Positions 1,265 to 63,886 of a stretch of 64,000 nt of DNA are shown here, one piece after another (within the stretch, counting starts at the first letter, position 1; each line of letters starts with the position of its first letter). Origin of the DNA: Selaginella moellendorffii (Eukaryota > Plantae > Lycopodiophyta). The notes below the pieces were generated by a model. It made no database searches, was not told the DNA's origin, and worked only from the letters and a program-made list of their open reading frames with translations. The DNA is taken from NCBI RefSeq assembly GCF_000143415.4, contig NW_003314338.1:506202-570201 (forward strand). The letters are read 5' to 3'. The translations under genes were made by a program, and so were the position numbers.

Positions 1265-1832
1265 CTCGTCTTGCTAGCAACTAACCCTAGGACACAAACC
1301 CTAGCACCCGGAAGAACCTGGAAGAAACGAGCCCGGATCAGCCAGATCGAATGCCGATGCGCGATCGGCAGCGCGATAATCCGCCGATCCAAGCACAAGG
1401 CCAGGGACCGGGCTACTCTCGTTCATCTCGCGAAATGGCGCGCATCCCGCCGGCGAAATCTTTGATCTTGATCTTCCCGCGGCGATGGAGAGGAGAAAGA
1501 GGGAAGAGGAGGAGGCGATCGCGAATTACGCGGCGGTGGATCTAGAGGTATCCAAGAGAATGCCGGGTCCGCCAAGCGCCGCTCCATGCTGCTGCTCCTC
1601 CTCGCCCAGACCTAAGCTGCGGCGTGAGTGCCATGAATCACGTCCACGTTTTTTGCCCCGGGAAGGGAATCGAACCCGTGACCCGGCTATGAAAAAGAGA
1701 CAAAAGGCTAGCGGGTAATAAGTAACTTTATCTCTTTACCGGCTTTATCCCGGCAAGTTGACACTTTCTTCGCGATTTGCATGTTCTTCATGCTGGCTCG
1801 AGTATATCTATATCGAAAATGGAGAGATTTCT

Positions 1833-4180
1833 TTAGTTCCCGGGAGTGTTTAAAGTTACCTCTTTTCTCCACATTTTCTGGAAGATCTCGTCGTCAACAA
1901 TCGCAGTGGCGGACTCGTAGCTCAGGCAGCGTTTCGAGAAAGCACTCAAGGCACGCTTATCTTTGGCGCTGGATTTCTACATAAGACAAAGAGAAATGTG
2001 TGTGTGAGAGAGAGAGAATTTGAGTGGTTAACCACTTACGAAAGACTTCTTCTTGCGTATGATCTCCGCAACGTAGTGTATCCACACGCTGTTATTCTTT
2101 GGGAAACTACAATCAAAACGCAATCACTTCGCTGTCGATCAGAATCGTTAAACACTTGCCTGCCTTCCCATTGTCCGCCTGTTATATCTTTCATTCTTCT
2201 ATACGTGTCAGCCTGCAAAATAAAAAGAATCAAGAAATGAATAACAGTGAACTTCCTGTTGCCTACCTGGACGTCTCCCTTTGGTCCTTCAAACCACGAC
2301 GGATCTGACAAGTCACAGAATACGACTTGCTTTCCTGGGACAAAAATGAAGAAATGAAAGTCATTGTCATTGTCAAGAAAGAAGACCGCATGACTGAAGG
2401 AACGTACCTGTGTCAATGCGGGATAAAGTAAAATCTATCAATGCCACTGATAACCCGTGCGTATTCACAAGAAAATGCCTGTTTTCTAATCTGAAGTCAA
2501 GCTGCTCGTGTTGATCCCTGGACAAGACAATGTTGCCCCTGCACTACAAAAATTAGACACAACTTAAGAGAATAAACTCCTCGTACCAGTGCAAGTCCCG
2601 ATGCTCGAAACCATATGCCTGCTCCGCAACTGCAAGCGAGAGAACAACCTGCGACAGAGTTATTGCTTGTTTGCTTGAGAAGCGAAGCTCACATACCTGT
2701 AGTAATAGGCTTTTAACTTCCTCATAGTTGAGGAGCTCAAAGCTTTCCAAGTCCGTGCCTCCGTCAGCAAGGACAAAGACAACATAAAGCTGACACAGAT
2801 GCCAATAGATTTAATATCCAAGCCTTGAAGTGCGACCAAACCTGTTCTTCCGGAAACGCCAATGGCTGATCGTTTTCAGAATTATGTTGTGTGTCCCACT
2901 TCTTCCACGCACGCACCAAGTTCTTATCGTATCTTCCCTTGCAAATTCGCGTCCTGTTGGAACATTAAGGATAAGAAAAAGCTCAAGTTCATCATGAAGA
3001 TCCAGAACTCACGCTTTTGTTTCAACGAACGAGGTGCAATGATAAGGAGAGCTTTTCTTTCGAAGCCAGTTCAGAGTGTTTGACAACAGCACCTCGCTGT
3101 AGATTTCAGTGGAAGTCTGCTCATACTGTAGAGATCGGAAGCCATTCGTAACGAAAACAAATATTCACCTTTTGAGTTTCGCCATTGACTTTAAAACTCC
3201 CGTCCATGGGAACGACTTTGAAAACATTCCCATTGCCTTTGTAAGCCTCTCCAAACGTCCCTTCTCCTATCTTCACTATTGTTTTCAGATCACTTAGCAC
3301 AGATAAAACGAGTTAGTCCGGACAAAAAATAACCGAAAGTACCCACCAAAACTCTGAAAATCCTTGTGAAAGGCTGACAATACTTTCCTGGTCCGACTCG
3401 TGTAGCAGGATGTCTATCATCGACATTGTGGGAAGCTCTGCAACTGGTTTCGAAATGCTTAAGCATTCCAGGTCCGATATAAGAGCGTCCATGGGCCTTG
3501 GTTTCAACACACCACGGACGGGAGGTGTTCTTAAGGCAGCGCTCAAAAGATCCTCTGGACTCGCAAAAATCTCCTCCGGAACAGCTTCCAAATGTCCATC
3601 CCTCGCAGGAAGAAAGCACGTACTGCCTTCGAAAATTGATCTCCGAGTAAAAGTTTTGGGAGAAGGACTCTCCTCCTGGAGCTCGAACGCATCCACTTCG
3701 GCAAAATGTGCTTGCTTCTCTCGAACAAAAGTGGCTGGAGGTTTCGAAGGAACCACCCTTCTCTGGGATCCATGAAAAAACTCAGGAACTCTCAAAACCT
3801 GGAAAAACCCAACGACTTACTTTCATCTGGGCCGAAAAACGTTGCAGCGCACAAGGTATCTTATGGTGCGCAAAATCCTTTTGAAAGACCACGCTTGTTC
3901 GTCTTGAAGAATCCAATCCACGAGTAAAGATAAAAGAAGAACACCGGAAAATCTCACCTGGAAGAAAGACAGCGATCGATCCAGCTCTTGGTATGCGTTG
4001 TCGTCCTCTTCCCCTCATCGGCGGCGCCTCCATCCCTGGCCTTGCCCCGCCGCTTAAAAACAGCAGCTGGCTTCTTCCTCTCCACTCCCGCGAAATCCCC
4101 ATCTGGCCGATGGATCAAGATCACAAGAACACTAGCAGCGGGGAAAAGAACACACCTGGGAACAGCGCCTCTTCCGCCAT
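1833..4180 (-). CDS. Haspin: Haspin-like Ser/Thr kinase, multi-exon
   Basis: Exons give KIGEGTFGEAYKGNGNVFKVVPMDGSFKVNGETQK, YGFEHRDLHW, DPSWFEGPKGDVQ, ADTYRRMKDITGGQW, matching plant haspin. Start MAEEALFP at 4180 and stop TAA at 1833 are inferred. Confidence 0.9.
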
Positions 4181-4407
4181 GTCCAAGCTCTGCTTCTCCA
4201 TTGCTAGGGCTCAAGCATTTCGAATATTGGGCGGGAAAGGGTTTAGGGCAATTAGGGCATACACGTGGACAGAAAATGGCATAAAGAGTATCGGGAATCT
4301 TTGCTGGATTAGTGTTCTTTGCGTGGGCTGTTTTCTAGGTGATGACAATAAAAAGGTCTTGGACGATGTTTCTCTGAGCTATTCTCCTCTAGAATTTGGG
4401 ATCGTTC

Positions 4408-5544
4408 ATGGGTCTTCCAAATTTCAATTTGCTATTGCTGATTATCAATGAGAATGTGTTGATCATATTTGCTAGTAAGTCTTCACTTGTGTTTTCCTTT
4501 TGATTAAATCTATGCGTTGCAGCTTTTAGTGCTGTGTGCTTGAAAGACTACACCAAAGCAGGAGTTTTAGTTTCTTTGTTCTTGCTTGGAAACTGGATCA
4601 TAGCTTGGTCTGAGGCGAATAACAAAGATCATGTAAGAATTCCCAATCTCTTCATTTGATTTTACATACGCTTGCCCAACAGATCAACATCTCCAATGAT
4701 CTAGAATCCGCATCATTTGTGAAAACCACAAGCTCGTCTCGTACCAAGATAGAATCTCATAACAACAAATCTGGCCAGACAGTCACAACAATGGTCACCG
4801 AAGAAACAAAGCTCTTCAAGCGATCACCGATTATAGACTTCTTTGCAAAATATCATACCCCAGGTTAGAAAACATTCTAAGAACATCACGAAATCATTGA
4901 TATTAAAGAAAATCACTATTGTGCGTGCCTGTGCAGCCATGATCTTAGCTACAGCACTGGTCCCTCTCGTGCTGGACACGAGCAATAAAAAACACTGGCT
5001 TTACTCGTCGCTCGTCGTAAGCCCATGCGCTCTTGTGATCTCTAGCACAGTCACAACCTCTGTTGCTAAAGCCCGAGCTGCGCAATTGGGTCTTGTGATC
5101 CAGGGCGATGCTGGCTGCCTCACGGCTCTTGCAAGGCTCAAGATCCAGAAGGAGAAACTCCGGGAGGTATTGAGCAACAAGGGCGAGATTACTGTGACAT
5201 GTGAGGATGGCGATGGCAGCAGCGAGCATGCGCGGCCAAGTCTCGAGCCCGACGAAGTTGCCATGCTCACATCGGCAGCTTGGATTGGGAGAGAGTATGT
5301 TGCGGCAGTCTCTTCTTGCAATCTCTTCTTGCTCGTCACAAAGATGCTCGTCACGGGGTTTGTGGTCGCTGGCTACATTCCAGCGCTTGGGGCAGTGGCC
5401 CTCATTGTAGATCTTGGAGCTTGCACGGCGGTGGCTTTGAGAGGATTTGTCACACTCTTGTTGGTCGAGGAGAAGGGAGCTTCTCGACGAGATCTGGAAG
5501 AGCGGGAACAAGGTGAATGGGATTTGATGACTCCGTTGCTTTAG
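4408..5544 (+). CDS. Membrane-domain-only derivative of an HMA2/HMA4-type P1B heavy-metal ATPase, copy 1 (about 321 aa; exons 4408-4474, 4523-4632, 4683-4863, 4937-5544)
   Basis: GT-AG introns join an open frame: INENVLIIFA / TFSAVCLKDYTKAGVLVSLFLLGNW / PIIDFFAKYHTP / AMILATALVPLVL...HWLYSSLVVSPCALVISS...RAAQLGLVIQG...VTKMLVTGFVVAGY...VDLGACTAVAL. These align by eye with the HMA2/4 TM segments. No TGE, DKTGT or GDGxND motif. Confidence 0.75.
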
Positions 5545-5779
5545 AATTCTCCAAATTGAAAGCTGTACGATATGGTGATGAGAATAGTGTATATGCACAT
5601 AGATGTGTTTACAAAATCTATATATATATATAAAGCGATAAGGCCCACTAGCTGTTGGATCCCAGGCCTGGGCCAAGGTCAGTAGCCATGGTTTTTGTAA
5701 AAAATTTATGGATGTTTGCACTGGCCAATCGGAAGTTGGCACAGTTTGGCTAATGATTGGCTGGTGCAAAAAAGAGAGA

Positions 5780-6100
5780 AATGTGACATATGTTACATTA
5801 TCTCCCCTCGACTCAAGGCAATTCATGGTGGACCTCCCTTGCTTCAAGGTGCTTGCATTGCATTGGGCTATGCCATACCTTCAGATCTCCTGGAAAAACT
5901 TTTAACCCTACTCAATCTATTTTATGGCATTGCACACCATGATAACAAAGAGGAATGTAAATCCATTTGGCTTAGTGTCCTCCTCTAGCAGCTTACCAAA
6001 GATCTCCACTACCTTGGCTACATTGCCTTTGTGGCTATAGCTTGCTATCATTGTGTTCCACAAAACCATGTCCTTGGATATCATAGGAAATGTGCTGAGT
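5780..6100 (-). pseudogene. PLS-type PPR gene fragment with in-frame stops
   Basis: Minus-strand translation KDMVLWNTMIASYSHKGNVAKVVEIFGKLLEEDTKPNGFTFLFVIMVCNAIK*IE*G*KFFQEI*RYGI. Confidence 0.8.
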
Positions 6101-6139
6101 AGTGGCTATAATTCCATACTTGCCATAAGCATTTGTGAT

Positions 6140-6622
6140 TATAGTGTATATAATCATGGGATGAGATTTAATTATTATAGATCTTTGGAATCTTAAGGAA
6201 TAAATGAGGACAAAATAACCATTAAATGCTCTTTCAACCTTTTTTCCAGTTGATTTAAAAGGGGAAAGAGATAAAATGCACTATATATAGAGCAAATTGA
6301 TTAGTGATTATTTAAAATATAATATACCTTTGAGTAAAATATATTCCTACCCCTAAATTTGAAATCATACATTCATACATATGTCTTTCCTTTTGTGGTG
6401 CATCCATGAATAAAAATATTCACTGTGGGACTGCAGTACGAATGGATGAGTAATTGCCTTATATGGAATAACCAGTTTACATAATAGAAAGATTGGTAAA
6501 TTCAATGTAGAAATAGCCATTGACATCTCTCAAGAGGGGGTTATAATTATGGGAACCTTAGGGAATAAATAGGGATAAAATAACTATTAATAACCTCCTT
6601 TTTAGTTTGTTTAAAAGGTGTT
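6140..6622 (+). mobile_element. Old, AT-shifted copy of the TRIM found at 9522-10176
   Basis: LTR-like 6140-6285 (atcatgggatgagattt...aaggggaaagagataaaatgcactata) and internal sequence (cctacccctaaatttgaaatc, tgtgggactgcagtacg) match the reverse complement of the young TRIM. The second LTR is degraded and cut at about 6622. Confidence 0.75.
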
Positions 6623-7171
6623 TATAGTGCATATGGTTTTTACCCTTTATCCTATGGTGATTAGGAACTCAAGTTTTAGGGCTTTGGGCCACTAAACGAA
6701 GGAATGGTGCCAAACTCCCAAGCATAGAGCCAAGGAACAATGGCATTAGAGCATGGAATGACTCCTAAGCATACAACCCAAGGAGCGAAGGAATAGGAGC
6801 ATGAAACAACTTAAAACAATTCTAGAGCATTTAACATCTCAATGCCATGACCAATAGAGCCAAACGAAATCTAGTGCTATTTCAACATACCAATATCCTA
6901 ACACGAGGACATGGGTACTCCACCAGCTAGCATGGTGTGGAGCTTGGGCTTAGACCCAAGCCTCCTTTAGTATTAGGAGTTAGTCTCTAGAACAAGCTTG
7001 AAACTTACTAATTATGGAATAGTGCTAGATTGTGAATTTGGATATGGGACAAATACCATTGTGTTCAAGACAATCTTTACATTCCGTAAATATGCCAAAT
7101 AAGAAAATCTAGAAACTTTCCATAAATAGCAATTGGGATCAAAATGAGACTAACACAAAGGACATGATAGC

Positions 7172-7866
7172 GATGATACAAAGGCACATACTTTGGGAAT
7201 GCAAAAGCACACAAGATGTGTGGAGAAGCACATGTTAGTTGCTGCAACAGCATTCCCAAAGACAAATGTGCCTCACGTATGAAGCAGCAATATGGGGCAA
7301 AGCTACCACAGGAATGTGAAATGGAACAGACTCTTGGAAATGGTCCTCAATAGGGGAAGTGGTACTGTGGTTTGACTAGCTCAACATGAAGAGAACAGAC
7401 ACAGAAGGAGTTCCCTTAGAGATAGTGGACCTATTGTGAGGAATTACGTTGTGGGAAGTGTGGAAAGCCTGGTGCAACAGAATTTTTAACGATACAGAAG
7501 GACCAAAGGTGGTGTTATCACAATTGTGGACTAGAATGATCATTGTAGTAGCAGCCCATGTCCTACAACTGGAAAAGAGAGGAGGGTGAAATGGTCTAGA
7601 AAAAGAGAGAAAGGAAGCACAGATTTGGCATTTCTTGTGGAAGCAAGGGGAAGCAGGTACTCGAGAGTGGATGTGGGCACCACCAGACGAATGGTTCCGA
7701 GTGACACATCTAGGCAGACCTTCGGGTTTTAGTTCACGAGCAACCCCCCTCTCTGTAGGTACTTCCATTGTAGGATCTCCTAAATAAGGCTTTTTGCTAG
7801 TTTTGTGCTTAATGAAACCATGCCTAGTTTTTTGGTGTTTTGCTAGAAAATAAAAGGCTCTGTTTA
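7172..7866 (+). mobile_element. 5'-truncated L1-type LINE (ORF2 C-terminus, decayed) inserted in an LTR
   Basis: Translation HILWECKSTQDVWR (zf-RVT) and ITLWEVWKAWCNRIFND, with stops. 17-bp TSD acaaaggacatgatagc at 7155-7171 and 7867-7883. The empty site is visible in LTR copies near 14540 and 44870. Confidence 0.85.
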
Positions 7867-9521
7867 ACAAAGGACATGATAGCAAGGGTGTTTGGTAGAT
7901 ACGGTAGACTATCATTCAACAATATTGAGAGACTAATCTCAATACACAAGAGTTCTTGTCATTAGCCAGTGAAAGACATAATGAAATGGGAACTTTTTAC
8001 TGGGCTAAGTATGCTTAGCTAATAACACATAAGAATTCTGTCTTTATGCTTGTTCGGTCTAAGTACATTCAAAATGCCTAGTTAACTCCACTAGCATAAA
8101 AAGGACTGATAAAGGATCTAGCAATACCGACCTTTTGCCGTTTTGGCAGTAAGGAAAGAGTGTCTGTAAAGATTGATTGACAGGTAACTTTCGATACCCG
8201 AAGTCACATTTGTGACACTCTTCCCCTCTTAGGGAAGATTGATGTCCTCATCGATGCATACTCTAGTTTAGATCACTGCCAAGGAAACAACTCTAGAAAA
8301 AGTTCATGGTGATCACACTATGTGAGAAATGCACCAACTTAAATGATTTACGAGGCAACCTCTTTGTCTAACACGGATGTGTTACCAGCTCAGACACATT
8401 CTAGCTGTTGCTGACAAGGAACTGACCAATGGAGTTAGCCACCCTTGCTACTCTGGTTGTCACCCAACTTATAAAAGTGTGATACGCCCCTGCCTGCATG
8501 TGGTATAGAGAGAGAAGCCAAAGACCTCAACCCTCCTAAGCAAAGAAACCAAACTTGTCGATAAGGTTTATAAATAGGTAGTTAGAGTTCTTTACACGGT
8601 CACGCCTTTTTAACGGAATAAGAAACATCGACAGAAAGATGGATTATGTGACCAGTTGACTGTAGCTACCCCATGACAAGAGATTTCACCATGCATATGA
8701 AGGGCAGAAGCCAATTTACCTATACTGGCCTAAATTTAAACATCAATAGATGGACAATACCAAAGACATAGACAATGATATCTTAGAGACTTAAGTATCA
8801 GTGATTAAATCTTATATTAGAACACAAAAGTATTCCAAAGAAGTTATTATCTGATAAACTAGTAGTAGAGTATAGGGACCACCAAGATTAGCATGTTTGG
8901 AAAACATAGGATTCATCATCCAACAAATTTCAATAACAAGTATACCATCAATTACATTTGATTGTAAAACTTAACTACCAAAGATTGTAAATAGTATGCT
9001 AAACAACTTCCGAAAGACAACTCAAAAAGCACAAAGTATTATCAATTGGCAAGCAAAATGCTCACAAATGTATCACTCGAAGGAAATAACATCTAATCTA
9101 TCAGAACCAACTATAGCAATAATCAACAGAACAGAATAAATGTTGCAAGACCAACAAATATAGCATTCATGCTAGCTATCATATTAGCCAATTTAAATAC
9201 ATCCCAGTCATAATATGAAAGAACTCAAGTTACTTAAGCAAGTGTTAGCAACATCTTAGCGATGTCTCGAACTCAAGAGACCAATCCAGAACAAATCACA
9301 AAGAACATGTGGTAATGTGAAAAGCCATAAGCCATCTGTAAGACACAAATCCCTAAGCCCCAAAGTGGAGTCAAAAGGGTGCCACGTGGTAGTGGCCGAA
9401 GTGAAAGCCAAACGAGCGTAACACGTTTAGACTAAAAACTCCAACTTGAGGAGTCCAAGATGGAGTCCGAGATGGACCCAAAATGGAGTCTAAGGTGAAC
9501 CGAGATAGAGTCCAAGATGGA

Positions 9522-10176
9522 TGTAGCGCACCTTATCTCTCTCCCCTTAAGCCAACTGGAAAAGGGGCAATTGCTTGATGAGAGAGCCCTTAGTGGCTAT
9601 TTTTTCCCCATTTATCTCCCAAGGGTCCAAGGATCCACGGTGACAGTATATCCAAATCTCATTCCATGATCACATGCGCTACACTCACCCCCCCTTCAGA
9701 GATGTCAATGTCCTCATTGACTATTGACTAACAACCCTTACTGAGCCAAGGGGAACCAGCACCTCCATTTTGGAAGGATTGGTAGACCAGCTATTCCATG
9801 TGAGGCAATTAGTCATCCACCCGTACCGCAGTCCCACGGTGGATACCTTCGTCTGTGGATACTTCACACAAGAGGAAGGACGTACGCATGGATGCCTAAT
9901 ACGTACGATTTCAAATTTAAGGGTAGGAATATACCTTGCTCAAGGGTATATTATACTTTTAAGTAGCCACTAATCAATGGGAATCGAACCCGTGCCATTT
10001 GCTCCGATACCAACTGTAGCGCACCTTATCTCTCTCCCCTTAAGCCAACTGGAAAAGGGGCAATTGCTTGATGAGAGAGCCCTTAGTGGCTATTTTTTCC
10101 CCATTTATCTCCCAAGGTTCCAAGGATCCACGGTGACAGTATATCCAAATCTCATCCCATGATCACATGCGCTACA
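9522..10176 (-). mobile_element. Intact young TRIM (terminal-repeat retrotransposon in miniature), 655 bp
   Basis: 162-bp LTRs at 9522-9683 and 10015-10176 (two differences seen) with tgtagcgca...tgcgctaca termini. TSD atgga. PBS TGGTATCGGAGC (iMet type) at 10001-10012 on the minus strand. PPT at about 9684-9698. No coding region. Confidence 0.95.
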
Positions 10177-10435
10177 ATGGACCCAAGATGGAGTTCAAGA
10201 TGGACTGAGATGGAGTCCGAGATGGAGTCCAAGATGGAGTCTGAGATGGACCCGAGATGGAATTCGAGATGGAGTCCGAAAAGGACCCGGGATGGAGTCC
10301 GAAGTCAAGACCGGGACCAAGACTGAGACTAAGACCGAGGCCAAGGCCAAGGCTAAGACCGAGCCCAAGCCCGAGTCCGAGTCCGAGTCCGAGTCCAAGT
10401 CCAAGTCCGAGTCCGAGTCCAAGTTCGAGTCTGAG
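10177..10435. repeat. Degenerate 12-bp (gatggagtccga) and 6-bp (gagtcc/aagacc) tandem array inside LTR family B; it continues at 9445-9521 on the other side of the TRIM
   Basis: Directly visible periodicity. A homologous array lies at about 16150-16320. Confidence 0.9.
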
Positions 10436-11650
10436 AGGGTGAAAGCCCAAAGCGTTCGTCTCCTAGACCCTAGGGGGTTTGGTGAGCTCTAAAAGTATAG
10501 TAGGGGGAAAACTCCAGTGGAGCCAGTTTGGTCAGAAAAGGCTAGTTTGGCCTAAGAAGGTTGTACCCAGGTGTTAGGTGACGGGATAACCACTAGGAGG
10601 TCCAAGGTTAGAGTGAATACAGACTAACGAGTGGGGTAGTTTGATGAAGTGTTCGAAAGTCAGCTCTAGTTCCCTCGGGAGATCGAATGGCCGATACTCC
10701 CAATCCAAGTATGGGTGGCACTACCTACTTGGATACCTAGTATGGCTCAACGGATCCTCACTCTAAGCCCATGGCTAGAGCACCTAAAGGCAGAAGGTGG
10801 GGAGAGTACCCATAGGGTTCGTGTAGAGCTATGGTATTCCCAAATGTTGTCCCGAAGTCCCAAACTGGGGAAAGGAGGAGGAGCAATCCTCTAGTGTAGT
10901 GACTAAGGATACAATCACATGGTGAGGAAGTCCTTGAGGACAATGGGACTTAGTGGCCGGGCTTGCAGGCCTTAATCTAGTGACAGTGTTGGTGAACATG
11001 GCCATGGACAGAAAAGGGACTTGGTAGGAACTAACAAAGGGATTTTGGGGAAGGTTATTCCCACGTCTGTGGGCATGCTAAAGTTGCTAAGGAGTGGATC
11101 GGGGATGACCACTCATGAATAATGGCCCAGTCTTGGAGAGATGGGACTGTGATGCAAGTGGTATTGGACCACCAATGCGGCAAAAGTGAATGAGCATGGC
11201 CTTAACGTAACGGGCCGATATGTCAGTAATACCTTTGGGTGTCGGTTATAGAATTGGACACGTGGAGCACTTGGGCCAAGTGCAAGCGGGGATGCCATTC
11301 TTGGGGCTAGCACGCCTAAATCTAGAATAAGACTTATGGAGGTTGTGAGTGAGACTCCTCCAAGACTCCTCCACGTGTCCTCATTGGAGGAATGACTAAA
11401 GTAGAATGGAAAAATTAGTCACTTACACCATCAAAGATGCCAACCACCCAACATTAATTAAATATACTTTACCAAACAACTTTTGGAATACTTCTAAAAA
11501 CTTAAAGCTAATTACTTTTAAGGCTTAGGGCATACACGTGATAGAAAATGGCATAAAGAGTATCATGTTCTGTTTCCTACGATGTTTCTATAGAACTTTG
11601 GTCATGTTCCCTAGGCTATTCTCCTCTAGAATTTGGGAAATTGTTCATTC

Positions 11651-12728
11651 ATGGCTCTTCCAAAAGTTGATTTGCTGTTGCTGATTATCAATGAGAATGT
11701 GTTGATCATATTTGCTAGTAAGTCTTCACTTGTGTTTTCCTTTTGATTAAATCTATGCGTTGCAGCTTTTAGTGCTGTGTGCTTGAAAGACTACACCAAA
11801 GCAGGAGTTTTAGTTTCTTTGTTCTTGCTTGGAAACAGGATCATAGCTTGGTCTGAGGCGAATAACAAAGATCATGTAAGAACTCCCAATTTCTTCATTT
11901 GATTTTACATACTCTTGTCCAACAGATCAACATCTCCAATGATCTAGAATCCGCATCATTTGTGAAAACCACAAGCTCGTCTCGTACCAAGATAGAATCT
12001 CATAACAACAAATCTGGGGAGATAGTCACAACAATGGTCACTGAAGAAGAAAAGCTCTTCAAACGATTGCCGATTATAGACTTTGCGAAATATCATACCC
12101 CAGGTTAGAAAACATTCTAAGAACATCACTAAATCATTGATATTAAAGAAAATCACTATTGTTTGTGCGTGCCTGTGCAGCCATGATCTTAGCTACAGCA
12201 CTGGTCCCTCTCGTGCTGGACACGAGCAATCGAAAACACTGGCTTTACTTGTCACTCGTCGTAAGCCCATGTGCTCTTGTGATCTCTAGCACAGTCACAA
12301 CCACTGTTGCAAAAGCCCGAGCTGCGCAATTGGGTCTTGTGATCCAGAGCGGTGCTGGCTGCCTCACGGCTCTCGCAAGGCTCAAGATCCAGAAGGAGAA
12401 ACTCCGGGAGGTATCGAGCAACAAGGGCGAGATCACTGTGACATGCGAGGATGGCGATGGCAGCAGCGACCACGGGCGGCCAAGTCTCGAGCCAGACGAA
12501 GTTGCCCTCTTCTTGCTCGTCACAAAGATGCTCATCACGGGGTTTGTGGTCGCTGGCTACATTCCAGCGCTTGGGGCAGTGGCCCTCATTGCAGATCTTG
12601 GAGCTTGCACGGCAGTGGCTTTGAGAGGATTTATCACACTCTTGTTGGTCGAGGAGAAGGGAACTTCTCGACGAGATCTGGAAGAGCAGGAACAAGGTGA
12701 ATGGGATTTGAGGACTCCGTTGCTTTAG
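11651..12728 (+). CDS. Membrane-domain-only HMA2/4-derived protein, copy 2 (about 300 aa; exons 11651-11717, 11766-11875, 11926-12103, 12181-12728)
   Basis: Duplicate of 4408-5544 with the same ATG, splice sites and stop. It differs by substitutions and two in-frame deletions (3 nt and 60 nt). Confidence 0.72.
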
Positions 12729-13802
12729 AATTCTCCAAGTGTTTGCCTTCAAATTGAAAGCAACCAGAAGTGTGCCATATGGTGATGCTGCAGTTAAGAA
12801 TATAGCGTATATGTGTTTACAGAATTCATAAATAAAAAATGACAATACTTACTTTTGGAATATCCATATATATATGTACTAGCAGCAAATGCTGGGTGGT
12901 TTGCAAATTTGATGCCATTTCAAGAGGTTTGCTGAGTTTAGTTATGTTTGCTGTTTGATCAACTCCACAATTGAAAGATATTCTTTTGACCAAACGTGAA
13001 TGTCTTAACCATAATTTAGTGTGTGTTAAGGTGCTGGACATTTCAGAAAAACTAAGTTGTGGTGGCTGTGGTTATTGCTCAGTTCCTGCATCATGCCCCA
13101 CAACTTAGCTATAATCATAAAATAGTAATGCATTTACCATACTTGATTGTTGTCTAAACTCCTCAAATCCAGATTTCCTATGCTGGAATTTATGAACTTT
13201 GCCCATGAGCATTACATAAGCTAGATTAGATCACTGTTGAGTTGCATTCCTCCATTTTGAACACAAAGAGGCCAAAGAATACTTCCAAGTTCATCTTTGG
13301 TGCAGGTGTTGCTACTTGCTCCACAGCCCATTAGAGAGGTTCCTTTTGGGATGAGCCAGAAACCATTATATTGCAATGAGAGCTACACTTAGGAAGTGAC
13401 AGGATGAAAACTGTACCTTTACTATTAGCAACTCGATAGCATGCTGCCATAACCAAAATGGCATACCACCCAATGCACACCACTCAATGCTAGCTTTCTT
13501 ATGGTGTGCATTTGAAACTCATAATTGCAAGTCAAGGGTGGCTGAGTAAATAGCTTTGTGGAATCATGGTTGGATTTGGAATTGTGTCATGTATTTGTCA
13601 GTTTACTTAAAAATTTCAGCATAGACTATATTCACAATGTAAAAATGTTGATCATGTGGTATAAGATTGCCTTGAAGGGGGGTTGCAAGCACTTCAACAT
13701 GAAGTTGTTTGGGTGATTTGCACCTTGAGAGAGGAACATAAAGTTGACCATATGTGAAAACAGATTGGGGGAGGTAAATGCCAACACAATCGAAAGTTTA
13801 AC

Positions 13803-16500: not shown

Positions 16501-16974
16501 CCCAAGGAAATGCTTAAGAGCAACTCCCACTTCCAGAAGAAAACCAATTACAATGCTCCCAACTCTTATAGAATAATGCCCCATTTAAGTATTTTGTGGC
16601 TTATTGGTCCTCACTCCTTCTTAAGGGTTTAGGCCTTCCCTTTGGGAAGGAAAAGATATCTCTATCGGGCCATTAGACCATAATGTTTCCCCCCAAGGTC
16701 CTAAAGCAAGTGATGCACCAAGCACTTAAGATTTAGAGGGTTTTATGATCAAATTTTATTGTACCAAGGGATATTAAAAACTTGAAGGTTTAGAGTGCTT
16801 AGCTACTTATGCCTGTGGGGATTGTAACCAAACATTAAGTTTAGTATAACTTAAAGAGGGGGATTAAAAGAGAATTTGGGAATTCATGGATGGATAACTA
16901 ACACTCTGTTGCTTATACAAGATTGTGGTTGCATCAGATTCATGTAATTTAGCAATAATTTTGATGTTTAAATT

Positions 16975-17210
16975 TATAAAACTATAGTATTTTGCAAAGA
17001 TGTTCATAAGTATTAAGTGTTTGAAGGGTTTTTCTTCCTCCATGATTATTGTAGTGAATGTCTCCACAAATACATTAATTTTGTTGTTGCAATAGTTCAT
17101 GTTAGTATGAGAAAAATTTGCAACTTCCACAACAGTTTGAACTGATGCAAACTCTAGATCATCTAATATGTTAATCTATTGGCATATTTAACTTTGTATA
17201 AATCAAAAGA
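16975..17210 (-). pseudogene. Diverged, AT-shifted relic of exon 3 of the HMA-derived gene
   Basis: INILDDLEFASVQ...NNKINVFVETFTTIIMEEEKPFKHLILMNIFAKYY versus INISNDLESASF...NNKSGQTVTTMVTEETKLFKRSPIIDFFAKYH. The preceding acceptor region is also similar. Confidence 0.65.
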
Positions 17211-20673: not shown

Positions 20674-21510
20674 TTAGGTGGGATCATGAGGAGCATCTGT
20701 AGGTGACAACCTCTTGTTACCAAAAGTGTGCTTGTTATTGTGCATCCACACCTTGAGGACGTGCCGCTTGACGCCCGTGTCGGCGCAAAACTGCGCCACC
20801 TCCGCCTCGTCGTGCTTCTGGATCCGCCACCCCAGCTTCTCCGACAGCACAAACATCCGCTCCTTCTGCTCATTGGTGAACTTCGTCCGGAACCTCTTCT
20901 TGAGCGGCTGGCCACCGCCGCCGCCGCCGCCGCCGCCGCCACCGCCAAAGTCCGCCAGCCGCTTACCGCCGCCGTGCCGCGCGGTACCGCCCGGCGTGCC
21001 GCCCGCGGTGCCGTCGTCCTCCTTGCACAGGTCGCAGATTGGCTTCTCGCCCTCCACCTCGCGGCGGTGGAAGTTGCGGTGGCAGTCGCAAGCGCCGCAG
21101 CGCATGGAGCTCTCGTCCTCCTTGTTGGGCATGAACTCACCGCAGCCGTCTAGGGCATGGCCGCCGATCCCCGCGGCGTGGTTCTTGAGGCACTCGCGGT
21201 AGCGCACCGCCTTCTTGGTACCGTCGGGCTTGAGCAGCGCCAAATCTTTGCCGGGGTCGATCGATGCCGCTGCCGTGTTGCCGTTGTTGGATGCCGCCGC
21301 GGCCGCTGCCACTGCCGCGGAGGAGAGCTTGGCGAGATTTTGCTGCTGCTGCTGCTGCTGCTTGGCGGTGGGGGTGGAGGAATCGTGGGCGGCGGCTGCC
21401 GCGGCGGCCGCGGCCATTGCCCCCGCGACGAAGCTCGGCGGCATGGGAATGGTGAGATCCGGGCGGATGCTGTTAGCGCTGCTGCTGTTGTCGTGCCCGC
21501 TCAAATCCAT
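20674..21510 (-). CDS. ZHD: Zinc finger-homeodomain (ZF-HD) transcription factor, intronless, 278 aa
   Basis: [27 protein letters not shown]...[14 protein letters not shown] and [16 protein letters not shown]...[10 protein letters not shown]...[10 protein letters not shown]. Poly-A/Q/G tracts. Confidence 0.97.
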
Positions 21511-23612: not shown

Positions 23613-23968
23613 TTAATTGTTAAAATCCTCAACCTAGTTTAATAATAAATGTTTTTAAATTTTCTTGTCAGCTGACACATGTGTAGAAACTAGAAACAGT
23701 TATATTAATATAATAAACACAATGCATTTTATATATATATATATATAAAATATAATAACATGTATTATATTTTGGCAAGCAAAAGCACATAGTGCTAAAT
23801 GATTTCTTTAGTTATTAGATTATTATTAAAAATTATTTGTAATAGTTTTCCTATTGCTTCTTTATTTAATAATGGCATCAAATCTAATATATCTAATTTT
23901 GAACCCAATATAGGGCAATGATCTCAATTGGATGGCATTGGATCTAATGAGAGGATGTGTTAGTTCGA

Positions 23969-25891
23969 ATGGTCCATGGGAGAACTCACATCTCCCCCCA
24001 CTTCCTTGCCAGCGTCTCCCAGCTCCTGAAAGACGATCTCGCCCAGCAGCTCAAGAAATGCACCGATCTCAACACTGGGAAGCTCCTCCATGCCCGGGTC
24101 CTCTCCTGCGGCCTCTCCCAGCATCGCATCCTCGCCCATCTCTTGATCCAAATGTACGCCCGCCTCGAAACCAATCTCGACTCCGCCACGCGCGTCTTCG
24201 ATCAGCTCCTGGTGAAGGACTGCGTCTCTTGCTCCGTGATCATGACCGCCCACATCCAGCACCGGCAATTGGATCAAGCCGCGGCGATCTTCCACGGTAG
24301 CCCCGGACGAGACGTGGTTTGCTGGAATGGGATGATCTCAGCGTTTGGGCAAAGCTCTCACGCCGCCACAGCGATCCAGTTCTTTCACAGGATGCCACAA
24401 TGGAACACCGTTTCATGGAACTCCCTCGTTGCAGCATATGCCCGAACTGGGCATCTTGTGGAATCTAAATCCACGTTCGATTCCTGCCAACATAGAGACA
24501 TCGTGACATGGATCAACATGCTAACTTCATACAGTACACATGGAAAGTTGGCGGAAGCACGTGCCGTGTTTGATTACATGCCGGAGTGGACGGTGATAGC
24601 GTGGAACTCAATCTTTACAGCGTATGCCCATGAAGGGTATCTTGTTGCAGCTAAAGGTGTCTTTGATGAGATGCCAGAAAAGAGCCTCGCATCGATCAAC
24701 GCGATGATAAATGCCTACGCTCAAAAGTCCCAGCTCCAGGAGGCGCGTGCCATGTTTGAGAAGCTTTCGGCGTGGGATATCCTCTCGTGGACGACGCTGC
24801 TCCAGGCATATGCCGAGAACGGGAATATCCCCGAGGCAGAGGAGATATACTCGAGAATGCCGGAGCAGGACGTGGTCTCCTGGACCGCAATGGTGGCGGT
24901 GTACGCTCAATCGGGGCAATTGGATCAAGCGAAATTTCTCTTTGATCGAATGCCACGAAGAAACGAGGTGTCGTGGTGTGCAATTCTCGCTGGTTTTGGT
25001 GGAAACCTCCACACTGCCGAGGCGAAGGGGTTCTTTGATCGGATGCCACTCCACTCCCCAGTGGCTTGCAACACCATGGTGTATAGCTTTGCGCAAAACG
25101 GCTGCCTCACTCAAGCAGTGGATCTGTTTGTGAATGTGAGTGATCACAATGTTGTGTCGTGGAATATGATCATCACAGCGTTTGCAAACAAGCGCGAGAT
25201 AGATCGAGCTAAGCACCTGTTTGATCGCATGCCCGGATGGAACTCGGCATCGTGGAGCACCCTCACAGCTGCATATGCCCAAACTGGCGATCTTGTTTCT
25301 GCGAGAAAGATCTTTGAGACAATGCCCGAGCATTGTGCTTTCTCGTGGAACACGATCATTGCCGGGTATGCCCAATCCGGGCAGCTTGTTAACGCAAAGT
25401 CTGCCTTCGATGCCATGCCCGAGAAGGATCTGATAACTTGGAACGCGATGTTGGATGGCTACTCGGAGAATGGTTGTGGGCAACAAGCCATGGATCATTT
25501 CAACTCACTCCAGCTCGAGGGAGTGATCCCAAACGAGATCTCGTTCCTGGCGGTTTTGATCGCGTGTAGTCACATTGGCGCGCTCCATCAAGCTTGGGAG
25601 AAGTTTGCGTCGATGACTTCAGACTATGGTTTACAACCCGTGAGAGAACACTACTCCTGCATTGTTGACAGCCTTGGGCGGTCGGGACGGCTGCTTGAAG
25701 CAGAGGAACTGATCAAGAATATGCCGTTTTCGCCGGACATAGCGATCTGGAACTGCTTGCTCAGTGCCTCGAAGCTATACCAAGATGTGGTTCGAGGAAG
25801 AGTGGCGGCCGAGAATCTTATAGACATTGATCCTGATGAGCCCGTAGCGTATGTTATGCTTTCAAAACTCTATGACTCTTTGTTCTTATAA
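23969..25891 (+). CDS. PLS-class PPR protein with a long tandem 31-aa (SS-like) array and E domain, no DYW
   Basis: Repeats of VSWNxxxxAYAxxGxLxxAxxxFDxMP, then PNEISFLAVLIACSHIG, EHYSCIVDSLGRSGRLLEAEELIKNMPFSPDIAIWNCLLSA, AYVMLSKLY. First ATG at 23969. Confidence 0.95.
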   Translation: MVHGRTHISPHFLASVSQLLKDDLAQQLKKCTDLNTGKLLHARVLSCGLSQHRILAHLLIQMYARLETNLDSATRVFDQLLVKDCVSCSVIMTAHIQHRQLDQAAAIFHGSPGRDVVCWNGMISAFGQSSHAATAIQFFHRMPQWNTVSWNSLVAAYARTGHLVESKSTFDSCQHRDIVTWINMLTSYSTHGKLAEARAVFDYMPEWTVIAWNSIFTAYAHEGYLVAAKGVFDEMPEKSLASINAMINAYAQKSQLQEARAMFEKLSAWDILSWTTLLQAYAENGNIPEAEEIYSRMPEQDVVSWTAMVAVYAQSGQLDQAKFLFDRMPRRNEVSWCAILAGFGGNLHTAEAKGFFDRMPLHSPVACNTMVYSFAQNGCLTQAVDLFVNVSDHNVVSWNMIITAFANKREIDRAKHLFDRMPGWNSASWSTLTAAYAQTGDLVSARKIFETMPEHCAFSWNTIIAGYAQSGQLVNAKSAFDAMPEKDLITWNAMLDGYSENGCGQQAMDHFNSLQLEGVIPNEISFLAVLIACSHIGALHQAWEKFASMTSDYGLQPVREHYSCIVDSLGRSGRLLEAEELIKNMPFSPDIAIWNCLLSASKLYQDVVRGRVAAENLIDIDPDEPVAYVMLSKLYDSLFL

Positions 25892-62530: not shown

Positions 62531-63886
62531 ATGGCGATGGCGGCAGTGGCAGCGTCTCTCCGCGCAAATCTCCGCTGCAAGAGGCCATGGCAGGAGGCGA
62601 GCGGCGCGCTGGGCGACCTGGGCACATTCGTCCCGATCGTCGTGGCGCTAACCCTAGTGAGGGGCCTGGATCTCGGTACGTCGCTCATCGCCACCGGCCT
62701 TTACAACGTCGTCACCGGCGCGGTGTTTGGCGTGCCAATGCCCGTCCAGCCGATGAAATCCATCGCCGCGGTGGCCATCACGGAGGGCGATTGGTCGCTC
62801 AGCATTCCCCAGGTCATGGCCGCGGGGCTGTGCGTTTCCGGGATCGCTTTCTTCCTCGGGATCACTGGGCTCATTCGAGTCGTGGCGTGGATCGTACCCC
62901 TGCCGGTGGTGCGAGGGATCCAGCTCGCGCAGGGGCTCTCCTTCGCGATCACTGCCGTGAAGTATGTGCTCCAGGAACAGGATTTCTCCAGAGGGAAGGC
63001 TACCGGGGACAGGCCTTGGCTGGGACTGGATGGGATCCTGGTCGCTCTCGCTGCTCTGGGATTCATCGTTCTTGCCAATGGATCCGGGCAAGGCGTCGAG
63101 AATTCACAGCGTGGTGATGATCAAGATCAAGAGGCCGGTGACGAAGAAGAACACGTCGAAAGCTCATCGCCCACCACCTTTGCGACGAGGATTCCAACCG
63201 CGCTGATCGTGTTCTTGGTCGGGATCCTCCTCGCAGCGGTGAGGAACCCGAGCATCTTCGATGCTCTTCGGCTGGGACCAAGCATCCCTCGCGTCACAAG
63301 GATCACTGGCGAAGACTGGAAGATTGGTTTTGTGCGAGGAGCGATCCCGCAGCTCCCTCTCACGATCCTCAACTCGGTGGTGGCGGTTTGCAAGCTCTCC
63401 AAGGATCTCTTCCCGGAGATGGAAGATCGCGTGTCGCCGACCAGGGTCTCGGTGAGCGTCGGGATCATGAACTGGATCGGGTGCTGGTTTGGAGCTCTCC
63501 CGGTTTGCCACGGCGCTGGGGGACTGGCCGGGCAGTATCGATTTGGAGCGAGCTCGGGAGCGTCAGTGGCGATGCTTGGAGCTGCCAAGCTTGTGCTTGG
63601 ATTGCTGCTAGGGAGCTCTTTGATCAGGCTTCTAGACGCGTTTCCTATCGGGCTTCTGGGGATCTTGCTGCTCTTCTCAGGGGTGGAGCTCGCCATGGCT
63701 TGCCGGGATCAGACGAGCAGGCTGGATTCGTTTGTGATGCTCACCTGTGTGGCAGTGTCGCAGGGATCCAAGAGTCTTGCCACTGGTTGTGTGTGTTCTA
63801 TACTTCTGTTTGTGTTGCTCAAGGTGAGAGATGTGGTGTTTTGGAGGCGTCTCTCTACTAGGAGCGATCTACAGCCACTGCTGTAA
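62531..63886 (+). CDS. MOT1: Molybdate transporter (MOT1 family), intronless, 451 aa
   Basis: EASGALGDLGTFVPIV, PMPVQPMKSIAAVA, PLPVVRGIQLAQGL, AIPQLPLTILNSVVAVC, LPVCHGAGGLAGQYRFG. Confidence 0.96.
   Translation: MAMAAVAASLRANLRCKRPWQEASGALGDLGTFVPIVVALTLVRGLDLGTSLIATGLYNVVTGAVFGVPMPVQPMKSIAAVAITEGDWSLSIPQVMAAGLCVSGIAFFLGITGLIRVVAWIVPLPVVRGIQLAQGLSFAITAVKYVLQEQDFSRGKATGDRPWLGLDGILVALAALGFIVLANGSGQGVENSQRGDDQDQEAGDEEEHVESSSPTTFATRIPTALIVFLVGILLAAVRNPSIFDALRLGPSIPRVTRITGEDWKIGFVRGAIPQLPLTILNSVVAVCKLSKDLFPEMEDRVSPTRVSVSVGIMNWIGCWFGALPVCHGAGGLAGQYRFGASSGASVAMLGAAKLVLGLLLGSSLIRLLDAFPIGLLGILLLFSGVELAMACRDQTSRLDSFVMLTCVAVSQGSKSLATGCVCSILLFVLLKVRDVVFWRRLSTRSDLQPLL

What the first reader, a model, noticed from the sequence alone, without database searches (positions are those of the whole stretch)
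4408..5544. A 'pump without a motor': spliced gene encoding only the membrane helices of an HMA2/4-type Zn/Cd P1B-ATPase
Seen: four exons with GT-AG introns splice into an open 321-aa frame that the ORF track shows only as fragments. Known: P1B-2 pumps run INIL..I / DY.EA..FLF..W / A-domain (TGE) / IDK..KYYTP / HW...CPC / GLLIKG..LE.LA / DKTGT-P-N domains / K helix / DxG helix. Here the TM landmarks appear in that order: INENVL, KDYTKAG, FAKYHTP, HWLY..SPC, GLVIQG..LTALARLK, VTKML, VDLG. The A domain is replaced by an S/T-rich linker of about 50 aa, and the whole P/N region by about 60 aa with no phosphorylatable Asp motif. The intramembrane Lys and Asp and one Cys remain, while the DYxEA Glu is Lys. 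Inference: losing both cytoplasmic domains while keeping frame and helices suggests a repurposed protein (passive metal conduit, metal sensor, or regulator of full-length HMAs) rather than random decay.
Basis: partly seen in the sequence, partly recalled or inferred. Interest (0 to 1): 0.8.

Follow-up and report, generated by a model that had tools for sequence, protein, structure and literature searches.

The report
Motor-less zinc-pump core gene family
A spikemoss (Selaginella moellendorffii) gene encodes only the six core membrane helices of the plant's own zinc/cadmium pump, with the ATP-driven parts deleted; it is transcribed, exists in several copies and has been kept by selection, so it probably has a non-pumping job that is still unknown.

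Summary
Exons 4408-4474, 4523-4632, 4683-4863 and 4937-5544 (all introns GT-AG) splice into a 321-aa frame identical to the annotated S. moellendorffii hypothetical protein SELMODRAFT_425782.

- **Splicing:** Introns 2 and 3 are skipped exactly as predicted in contigs of a public run. Intron 1 was not covered.
- **Homology:** A family profile finds the species' own HMA2/3/4-type P1B-2 ATPase first (E 3e-31). Three collinear blocks match M1-M2, M3-M4 and M5-M6.
- **Origin:** The three introns sit at the positions and phases of parent introns 4, 5 and 7. The gene is therefore a genomic duplicate that lost the N-terminus with MA/MB, the A domain, the P/N domains and the C-tail.
- **Copies:** Five more copies exist in tandem and on two other scaffolds. 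Four are intact and one is frameshifted. The window also holds a dead fragment.
- **Selection:** dN/dS between the two subfamilies is 0.38 (CI 0.27-0.52) at dS 0.75. All nine exon indels in intact copies, upstream of the C-terminal tail, are in frame.

It cannot pump, because DKTGT, TGE and the HAD fold are gone. Three residues needed for Zn transport are also changed: the M2 Glu to Lys, CPC to SPC, and the Pro of the STP motif after M4 to Thr. I therefore favour a non-catalytic membrane role over a metal conduit. The function is untested.

The parts
4408..4474 (+). Exon 1 (ATG; 22 codons + 1 nt): first half of helix M1. Derived from the 3' part of parent HMA exon 4.
   Evidence: The ATG, frame and donor GT are conserved in all six copies. 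No read or contig covered it.
4475..4522 (+). Intron 1 (48 nt, GT-AG, phase 1), equivalent to parent HMA intron 4 (codon 326, phase 1).
   Evidence: The junction was not covered by reads; a contig of run X1 starts exactly at 4523.
4523..4632 (+). Exon 2: rest of M1, the short outer loop with Lys34 (Glu in pumps), and M2.
4633..4682 (+). Intron 2 (50 nt, GT-AG, phase 0), equivalent to parent intron 5 (phase 0). The mini exon 2 is 12 nt longer than the parent exon.
   Evidence: A contig of run X1 skips 4633-4682 exactly. Position and phase.
4683..4863 (+). Exon 3: Ser/Thr-rich linker that replaces the A domain, then the conserved pre-M3 stalk (FAKYHTP). It corresponds to parent exons 6 and 7 with an internal deletion that removed parent intron 6 and the TGE loop.
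   Evidence: pLDDT is below 50 for residues 69-105.
4864..4936 (+). Intron 3 (73 nt, GT-AG, phase 1), equivalent to parent intron 7 (codon 490, phase 1).
   Evidence: A contig of run X1 skips it; the cut is ambiguous by 3 nt because of a repeat. Position and phase.
4937..5544 (+). Exon 4 with stop (5542-5544): M3, M4 with SPC148-150, the first P-domain strand (GLVIQG), a 46-aa linker replacing the P/N domains, M5 with Lys255, M6 with Asp278-x-Gly, and a short acidic tail. It corresponds to the start of parent exon 8 fused to the end of parent exon 12.
   Evidence: RNA-seq raw reads lie on 5173-5574, with the first mate mostly on the minus strand.
11651..12728 (+). Tandem copy 2 (SELMODRAFT_425783, 300 aa). 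Same four exons (11651-11717, 11766-11875, 11926-12103, 12181-12728). It has a 60-nt in-frame deletion that removes 20 residues before M5, and a 3-nt deletion.
   Evidence: Reads and contigs carrying the 60-nt gap are seen in runs X1, X4 and X14.
16919..17181 (-). Dead fragment of a third copy of the divergent subfamily type (SELMODRAFT_417746). Only exon 3 and part of intron 3 remain, and the donor GT is lost.
   Evidence: tblastn gives 89% identity to P0004 residues 62-126. blastn gives 91% to L001:10278-10551. Sequence read.

Best explanation
**Shown.** This is a real, spliced, transcribed gene of Selaginella moellendorffii. It belongs to a small tandem family that arose when the species' own HMA2/3/4-type Zn/Cd pump gene was duplicated as genomic DNA. 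The duplicate then lost four parts: its 5' part (metal-binding domain, helices MA and MB), most of the A domain, nearly the whole P and N domains, and the C-terminal tail. Three parental introns were kept. What remains is the six-helix core M1-M6, joined by two short, probably disordered cytosolic linkers.

**Shown.** The protein has no phosphorylation site, no nucleotide-binding fold and no TGE loop. It therefore cannot work as an ATP-driven pump.

**Shown.** The truncated form predates the split of two subfamilies (dS 0.75) and has since evolved under moderate purifying selection.

**Inferred.** It is made and inserted in the membrane with the parental topology, N-terminus and both linkers in the cytosol. 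It acts as a non-catalytic membrane protein.

**Favoured mechanism, low confidence (about 0.3).** It acts as a modulator or decoy that associates with the full-length HMA pump or with its partners, in the manner of plant microProteins or truncated SERCA1 isoforms. I favour this over a metal conduit for two reasons. Three positions essential for Zn transport are changed in all copies: the M2 Glu to Lys, the first Cys of CPC to Ser, and the Pro of the STP motif after M4 to Thr. The Lys-Asp pair that is retained may only be a buried structural salt bridge.
For: **Gene model.** The spliced frame equals the annotated protein.

**Splicing.** Introns 2 and 3 are skipped in contigs. Raw RNA-seq reads lie on exon 4, with an orientation that fits a plus-strand RNA.

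**Homology.**
- Profile against 1.84e9 proteins: best non-self hit is S. moellendorffii HMA (E 3e-31), with three collinear stretches.
- BLASTP blocks: 48%, 35% and 34% identity.
- ZntA 4umv: E 1.2e-7.

**Origin.**
- Intron positions and phases equal parent introns 4, 5 and 7.
- The family is monophyletic (100/100) and sister to Sm HMA-a (99/93), with a stem about four times longer than the parent's branch.

**Selection.**
- dN/dS 0.38, bootstrap CI 0.27-0.52, Fisher p 5e-11. dS 0.75 agrees with an intron divergence of about 0.78.
- A value below 0.5 means both lineages were constrained.
- 9 of 9 in-frame exon indels upstream of the C-terminal tail in intact copies, against 2 of 8 multiples of three in introns. 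The one frameshifted copy shows 15 nonsynonymous to 3 synonymous private changes, against 22 to 16 pooled for the intact copies.

**Fold.** The AF2 model has six confident long helices, pLDDT 76-91. The 12 best structural matches are all P-type ATPases: 8q74 Z 12.7, and ZntA Z 12.4 over 242 residues.

**Catalytic motifs absent.** No Pfam hydrolase domain is found, and E1-E2_ATPase scores below its cutoff. DKTGT is replaced by EKLRE and deleted in the other subfamily.
Against: - No protein-level evidence exists.
- Expression is low: depth about 4-8 in an eighth of two 10.8-Gb runs.
- Exon 1 and intron 1 are unconfirmed.
- ω of 0.38 is relaxed compared with typical housekeeping genes.
- Comparisons among the recent copies (ω 0.45-0.61) are mostly not significantly below 1.
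- The family shows turnover: one frameshifted copy, one dead fragment, and a 20-aa deletion next to M5 in copy 2.
- No orthologue was found outside S. moellendorffii.
- The AF2 fold rests on an alignment dominated by full-length pumps, so it is not independent evidence.
- Nothing here tests interaction with HMA pumps. The only reported Zn-pump dimer interface is not conserved (PMC13677743).
Confidence: 0.6

Rival explanations
1. Passive metal-binding protein or conduit. The six-helix core still binds Zn/Cd at the SPC/Asp/Lys site and lets metal leak or equilibrate across a membrane, or buffers or senses it, without ATP.
For: Pro149, Cys150, Asn248, Lys255, Asp278 and Gly280 are invariant in all copies across dS 0.75. 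The model superposes on the M1-M6 core of ZntA, CadA and HMA4. Truncated SERCA1 isoforms that cannot pump do increase ER calcium leak (PMC2192035).
Against: The first Cys of CPC is Ser, the release-path Glu (AtHMA4 E169, ZntA E202) is Lys, and the Pro equivalent to AtHMA4 P366 is Thr. E169A and P366L each abolish Zn transport in planta (PMC6305203; alignment). M4 is four residues shorter. Extra lysines sit in both outer loops. At 65% identity in the helices, keeping six given residues is only weakly non-random (about 0.08).
Confidence: 0.15
2. Transcribed relic. The family had a function, or merely an open frame, in the past and is now decaying. The window's copy is an expressed unitary pseudogene-like remnant with no present role.
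For: One copy is frameshifted and one is reduced to a fragment. Copy 2 and the L002 copy carry 20-aa and 12-aa deletions. Between the two haplotype alleles, ω is 0.55 and not significantly below 1. Expression is low. No orthologue is known in other species.
Against: ω of 0.38 with its CI essentially below 0.5 requires constraint in both subfamilies. At dS 0.75 a neutral 966-nt frame would have acquired many stops, yet five copies are open and have all six splice sites intact. The ratio of nonsynonymous to synonymous differences is the same between alleles (14:8) as between subfamilies (167:103), so there is no sign of recent relaxation.
Confidence: 0.2
3. Gene fragment captured and spread by a transposon (Pack-MULE or Helitron type), with the open frame a by-product.
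For: There are several copies at three loci. TE-like repeats fill the 6 kb between the two window copies. An imperfect 27-nt inverted repeat flanks copy 2.
Against: The copies lie in tandem at a syntenic site next to the Haspin-kinase gene in both haplotypes. The shared unit is only the gene plus about 40-110 bp upstream and 10-140 bp downstream, depending on the pair. No long terminal inverted repeats or common termini are present. The inverted repeat at copy 2 is absent at copy 1. Selection on the frame is not expected for captured fragments.
Confidence: 0.03

Closest known systems
Plant HMA2/HMA3/HMA4 and bacterial ZntA/CadA (P1B-2 Zn/Cd/Pb P-type ATPases). Nearest relative: S. moellendorffii XP_002970998 / XP_024531832.
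   Same: Descent is shared: 48% identity over M3-M4, three shared intron positions, and sister position in the tree. It keeps the M1-M6 core, Pro-Cys of CPC, the M5 Lys, the M6 Asp-x-Gly, and the pre-M3 FAKYxTP stalk.
   Different: It has no HMA metal-binding domain, no MA or MB helices, no A domain or TGE loop, no DKTGT, no HAD-type P domain, no N domain and no Cys-rich C-tail. CPC is SPC, the M2 Glu is Lys, the STP Pro is Thr, and M4 is 4 residues shorter. It cannot run a Post-Albers cycle.
SERCA1 truncated splice isoforms (S1T), PMC2192035
   Same: Both are natural proteins derived from a P-type ATPase that cannot pump yet are expressed and sit in a membrane. S1T is reported to oligomerise and raise ER Ca leak, which gives a precedent for a pump remnant with its own activity.
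   Different: S1T is a splice variant of the pump gene itself, truncated at the C-terminus. It keeps the A domain and part of the P domain and loses M5-M10. The Selaginella proteins are separate genes. They keep all six core helices, lose every cytosolic domain, and have persisted as a gene family under selection.
Plant microProteins (small paralogues that keep only an interaction domain of a larger protein and titrate it)
   Same: The evolutionary route is the same: duplication followed by domain loss. The product is a small paralogue alongside an intact multi-domain parent in the same genome.
   Different: Known microProteins are soluble and mostly target transcription factors. No membrane-embedded case derived from a pump is known to me (own knowledge), and no interaction was tested here.
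Metagenomic bacterial P1B-ATPase derivatives P0082 (395 aa) and P0073 (270 aa)
   Same: Both are short proteins that match the P1B profile in one stretch across the place where the P/N domains should be. P0082 also lacks most of the A domain, and its gene follows a FUR-family regulator gene.
   Different: They are prokaryotic and unrelated in origin. They still carry CPC and DKTG, and P0082 appears to keep N-terminal hydrophobic stretches where MA and MB would lie. They may be decayed genes or assembly artefacts, and I did not study them further.

Membership tests
P1B-2 P-type ATPase (HMA2/3/4, ZntA) | DKTGT motif with the phosphorylated Asp at the start of the P domain | tested here: not met
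   The aligned position reads EKLRE in the window protein. The other subfamily has a 3-residue deletion there.
P1B-2 P-type ATPase (HMA2/3/4, ZntA) | HAD-like P domain and nucleotide-binding N domain (Pfam PF00702; GDGxNDxP and HP motifs) | tested here: not met
   There is no PF00702 hit, while the parent scores 7e-31. About 250 parental residues are replaced by 46.
P1B-2 P-type ATPase (HMA2/3/4, ZntA) | Actuator domain with the TGE loop (Pfam PF00122) | tested here: not met
   PF00122 matches only its C-terminal half (profile positions 93-180), at 17.4 bits against a cutoff of 28.1. The TGES stretch of the parent lies inside deletion 1.
P1B-2 P-type ATPase (HMA2/3/4, ZntA) | CPC motif in M4 | tested here: not met
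   It reads SPC in all copies; Pro and the second Cys are invariant.
P1B-2 P-type ATPase (HMA2/3/4, ZntA) | M5 Lys and M6 DxG signature (N-x7-K ... D-x-G) | tested here: met
   Asn248, Lys255, Asp278 and Gly280 are present in all copies and align to the parental residues.
P1B-2 P-type ATPase (HMA2/3/4, ZntA) | Eight membrane helices (MA, MB, M1-M6) and an N-terminal HMA metal-binding domain | tested here: not met
   The protein starts at the position of parental residue 298, just before M1. Six hydrophobic helices are present. No HMA-derived sequence lies upstream, and the Haspin-kinase gene on the other strand reaches about 220 bp from the ATG.
P1B-2 P-type ATPase (HMA2/3/4, ZntA) | Common descent with the family (significant similarity, nesting in the tree, shared introns) | tested here: met
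Non-functional pseudogene | Disrupted frame or splice sites, dN/dS near 1, no transcript | tested here: not met
   The window gene has an open frame and intact splice sites. ω is 0.38. Spliced contigs and RNA reads exist. One paralogue (L001:7877-8926) does meet the definition.
microProtein / dominant-negative truncated pump | Physical association with the full-length parent and modulation of its activity | not testable with these tools
   No interaction or activity data are available. This is inference only.

The most novel reading that the evidence does not exclude
A land-plant lineage has kept, under selection for a long time (dS 0.75), a family of free-standing M1-M6 cores of a P1B ATPase. 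These cores would fold and act on their own in a membrane, either as an ATP-independent metal pathway or sensor, or as a membrane-embedded microProtein that tunes the full-length Zn/Cd pump. That would be the first natural 'transport domain only' P-type ATPase and a ready-made minimal system for studying the ion pathway uncoupled from the motor.
Probability: 0.3. Interest if true: 0.8.

Novelty: new variant of a known kind. Interest (0 to 1): 0.55.

Why it matters
P-type ATPases are treated as indivisible machines in which the membrane core has meaning only when coupled to the A, P and N domains. A natural core-only derivative that has stayed open, spliced, expressed and selectively constrained suggests the six-helix core can be stable and useful on its own.

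If that is confirmed, it offers three things:
- a minimal natural scaffold for studying metal recognition and gating without the catalytic cycle;
- a possible new layer of Zn/Cd homeostasis control in a lycophyte;
- a clear, datable example of gene birth by domain deletion, with intron positions as witnesses.

The genes are currently annotated only as 'hypothetical protein', with no domain. One model wrongly fuses two copies.

Tried and rejected
- **Pfam on the separate exons and the whole protein.** Nothing passed a cutoff; there was only a sub-threshold E1-E2_ATPase hit. Family scans alone would have missed the link.
- **Foldseek against PDB.** ZntA ranked first, but only at E 0.32 over 86 columns, because of the large insertions in the targets. 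The gapped structural aligner was needed.
- **Retrogene origin.** Rejected, because three parental introns are retained.
- **Missing upstream exons encoding MBD, MA and MB.** Rejected. tblastn with two full-length Selaginella HMAs finds nothing outside the mini-genes, and a Haspin-kinase gene on the other strand reaches about 220 bp from the ATG.
- **Transposon capture.** No shared termini or long inverted repeats were found.
- **Relics of the A or P/N domains inside the linkers.** The alignments there are at noise level.
- **Orthologues in other species.** None turned up in the exhaustive representative search or in two word-index searches. Coverage of other Selaginella proteomes in these collections is unknown, so absence is weak evidence.
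- **Literature.** No paper names these loci or describes domain-less HMA paralogues.
- **Earlier notes of this scan.** Two look-ups in the scan's own notes returned nothing.
- **Parent gene DNA.** Look-ups for three HMA protein versions failed before P0154 succeeded.

Full report
**1. What is there**

The window is from Selaginella moellendorffii. Joining 4408-4474, 4523-4632, 4683-4863 and 4937-5544 removes three GT-AG introns of 48, 50 and 73 nt and gives a 966-nt frame of 321 aa. This protein is identical to database protein P0001, 'hypothetical protein SELMODRAFT_425782'. The gene model already exists but carries no functional annotation. Pfam finds nothing above threshold in the exons or the whole protein. 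The only hit is a sub-threshold one to the C-terminal half of E1-E2_ATPase, 17.4 bits against a cutoff of 28.1.

**2. Transcription and splicing**

Their sequence variants identify them as the allele on the other haplotype. Raw reads of two declared RNA-seq runs (X14, X15) lie on 5173-5574 at low depth. The first mate is mostly on the minus strand, which fits a plus-strand RNA in a standard stranded library.

Exon 1 and intron 1 were not covered by any run. One X1 contig begins exactly at 4523, which is compatible with a junction there but does not prove it.

Reads and contigs with a 60-nt gap (5263-5322) match a deletion that is present in the DNA of the tandem copy, so a deleted form is transcribed too.

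**3. Homology to P1B-2 pumps**

A profile of the four database family members was searched against 1.84 billion representative proteins. It finds 650 proteins at E up to 0.001. Of the 150 best that were listed, most are 550-1,550 residues long; the few examined were P1B-type ATPases or fragments of them. The best non-self hit is the species' own HMA2/3/4-type pump (P0005 = XP_024531832, E 3e-31), matched in three collinear stretches.

BLASTP gives these blocks:

| Mini-protein residues | Parent residues | Identity | Region |
|---|---|---|---|
| 6-48 | 306-348 | 35% | M1-M2 |
| 100-189 | 467-562 | 48% (E 7e-22) | pre-M3 stalk, M3, M4, first P-domain strand |
| 236-312 | 815-887 | 34% | M5-M6 |

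Against solved structures the profile hits ZntA 4umv at E 1.2e-7 and CadA 7qbz at 0.014.

**4. What is missing or changed**

Compared with the 1038-aa parent, the protein lacks:
- residues 1-297, which hold the HMA metal-binding domain, MA and MB;
- about 118 residues of the A domain with its TGES loop, replaced by about 50 mostly Ser/Thr/Asn/Lys residues;
- about 250 residues of the P and N domains, replaced by 46;
- the Cys-rich C-tail.

At the phosphorylation motif, DKTGT is EKLRE, and the other subfamily has a deletion there. Within the helices:
- the nearly invariant M2 Glu is Lys34;
- CPC is SPC148-150;
- the Thr-Pro after M4 is Ser-Thr;
- M4 is four residues shorter.

Asn248, Lys255, Asp278 and Gly280 are kept in all copies.

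In AtHMA4 the equivalents of the Glu (E169), the Pro (P366), the Lys (K667) and the Asp (D688) are each essential for Zn transport in planta. C357, C359 and D688 form the binding site (PMC6305203).

**5. Origin**

I mapped the exons of the parent gene (L003:3001-6750) by exact protein-to-DNA threading. Mini-gene introns 1 and 3 fall in the same codon and phase as parent introns 4 (codon 326, phase 1) and 7 (codon 490, phase 1). Intron 2 matches parent intron 5 in phase (0), with the mini exon 12 nt longer. Parent intron 6 and introns 8-11 lie inside the two deletions.

The gene is therefore a genomic (not retro-) duplicate that suffered 5' and 3' truncation and two internal deletions. On 204 shared columns the family is monophyletic (100/100) and sister to S. 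moellendorffii HMA-a (99/93), inside the vascular-plant HMA2/3/4 clade. Its stem branch is 1.49 against 0.38 for the parent.

**6. The family**

| Copy | Location | State |
|---|---|---|
| Copy 1 (the finding) | window 4408-5544 | intact, 321 aa |
| Copy 2 (SELMODRAFT_425783) | window 11651-12728 | 300 aa; 60-nt and 3-nt in-frame deletions |
| Fragment | window 16919-17181, minus strand | dead exon-3 fragment of the divergent type |
| L1A | L001:6290-7419 | intact allele of copy 1, 320 aa |
| L1B | L001:7877-8926 | 8-nt frameshift |
| L1C (P0004 = SELMODRAFT_417746) | L001:10001-11128 | intact, 322 aa, 59% identical to copy 1 |
| L2 (P0002) | L002:10001-11111 | 308 aa; 36-nt in-frame deletion |

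Scaffold GL377600 (L001) is the other haplotype, with flanks 97-99% identical to the window. L002 is a third scaffold. All six copies keep GT-AG at all three introns. The annotated 544-aa SELMODRAFT_417745 is a fusion of L1A and L1B.

No relative with this architecture was found in any other species. How well other Selaginella species are represented in those collections is unknown.

**7. Selection**

- Between copy 1 and the divergent subfamily, Nei-Gojobori dN is 0.281 and dS is 0.747. ω is 0.38, with bootstrap 95% CI 0.27-0.52 and Fisher p 5e-11. dS agrees with the intron divergence of about 0.78.
- Both subfamilies share both deletions and have homologous linkers, so the truncated form predates the split. 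An average ω below 0.5 cannot be produced if either lineage had been neutral throughout.
- ω is similar in helices and linkers (0.32-0.46).
- Among the recent copies ω is 0.45-0.61, and most comparisons are individually not significant.
- The nonsynonymous-to-synonymous ratio between the two alleles (14:8) equals that between subfamilies (167:103), so there is no sign of recent relaxation.
- In intact copies, all nine exon indels before the C-terminal tail are multiples of three. In introns, 2 of 8 are.
- The frameshifted copy has 15 nonsynonymous and 3 synonymous private changes, against 22 and 16 pooled for the intact copies.

**8. Fold**

AlphaFold2 was run with an alignment of the family plus 56 pumps. 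It gives mean pLDDT 70.8 and pTM 0.67. The long helices are confident (block means 76-91) and the linkers are below 50. Foldseek alone ranks ZntA first, but only at E 0.32 over 86 columns. The gapped aligner puts P-type ATPases in the top 12 places: HMA4 8q74 at Z 12.7, ZntA 4umv at Z 12.4 over 242 residues with rmsd 4.7, and CadA 7qbz at Z 11.9.

This fits an M1-M6 core. It is not independent evidence, because the alignment that drove the model consists mostly of full-length pumps, and Z near 12 is borderline for helical bundles.

**9. Mechanism**

Shown: the protein cannot be phosphorylated, cannot bind ATP and cannot dephosphorylate, so it is not a pump.

Inferred: it inserts with the parental topology and works as a non-catalytic six-helix membrane protein.

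I favour a modulator or decoy role towards the full-length pump or its partners (about 0.3) over a passive metal pathway (about 0.15). Three residues individually needed for Zn transport are changed in every copy, M4 is shortened and the outer loops have gained lysines. The retained Lys-Asp pair may simply be a buried salt bridge.

A present-day functionless relic keeps about 0.2. Truncated SERCA1 isoforms show that a pump remnant can have its own activity (PMC2192035). The one reported Zn-pump dimer has a non-conserved interface (PMC13677743), which gives no support for heteromer formation.

**10. Verdict**

The function is open. The gene is a new variant of a known kind. It is a curiosity of real interest to P-type ATPase and plant metal-homeostasis specialists, limited by its single-species distribution, low expression and lack of functional data.

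Noticed in passing
L004:3355-4542 (metagenome contig ena:ERZ26693581:ctg324960_2x_l): A 395-aa bacterial-type protein (P0082; three cluster members of 359-395 aa) matches the P1B profile in one stretch. It keeps CPC and DKTG but lacks most of the A domain and the whole P/N region. Its gene lies directly downstream of a FUR-family regulator gene. It may be an independent 'motor-less' P1B derivative, or a decayed gene.
   Followed up: partly
P0073 / P0162 (metagenomic, 270-278 aa): These short P1B ATPase-like proteins go from DKTGTLTEG almost directly to the pre-M5 region. The N domain and most of the P domain are deleted, while the A domain is present.
   Followed up: no
L001:6290-8929: The annotated 544-aa protein SELMODRAFT_417745 is an artificial fusion of two tandem mini-genes. 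The second one carries an 8-nt frameshifting deletion and a 12-nt deletion.
   Followed up: yes
window 5545-11650 versus L001:7420-7876: The two haplotypes differ structurally. About 6.1 kb of repeat-rich DNA separates copies 1 and 2 in the window, with repeats that match window 38-50 kb. The spacing in the other haplotype is only about 0.46 kb. Near the gene the haplotypes are 97.2% identical, against 99.2% further upstream.
   Followed up: partly
L002:214-702, 8273-8770 and 9539-11215: A third scaffold carries pieces 98% identical to the Haspin-kinase side of the window, followed by another mini-gene copy (P0002). This points to a recent segmental duplication or an assembly of a third haplotype-like region.
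   Followed up: no
window 5141-5340 (run X4, contig record 8): One contig is identical to copy 1 on 5141-5262 yet carries the 60-nt gap typical of copy 2 (ends AT..AT, next to a short direct repeat TCTCTTCTTGC). This suggests gene conversion or a recombinant allele in that plant rather than splicing.
   Followed up: no
window about 1745-4210, minus strand: The neighbouring gene is a Haspin-kinase homologue, identified by 97-99% identity to L001:3787-6091 (PF12330). A minus-strand contig of run X4 skips 4103-4155 (CT..AC on the plus strand, so GT..AG on the minus strand) and reaches to 4188. The two genes are therefore head to head with about 220 bp between them.
   Followed up: partly
window 20674-21510 (-), 23957-25891 (+), 56208-58505 (+), 62531-63886 (+): Other long ORFs in the window encode a ZF-HD dimerisation-domain protein, two PPR proteins and a MOT1-type molybdate transporter.
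   Followed up: no
window 11429-11455 and 12888-12914: A 27-nt, 85% complementary inverted repeat flanks copy 2 but not copy 1. It is probably chance.
   Followed up: no
run X11 (organism B): A run labelled as a different organism holds 8% of the sampled words of the gene region. It might be a related species carrying the family, or contamination.
   Followed up: no
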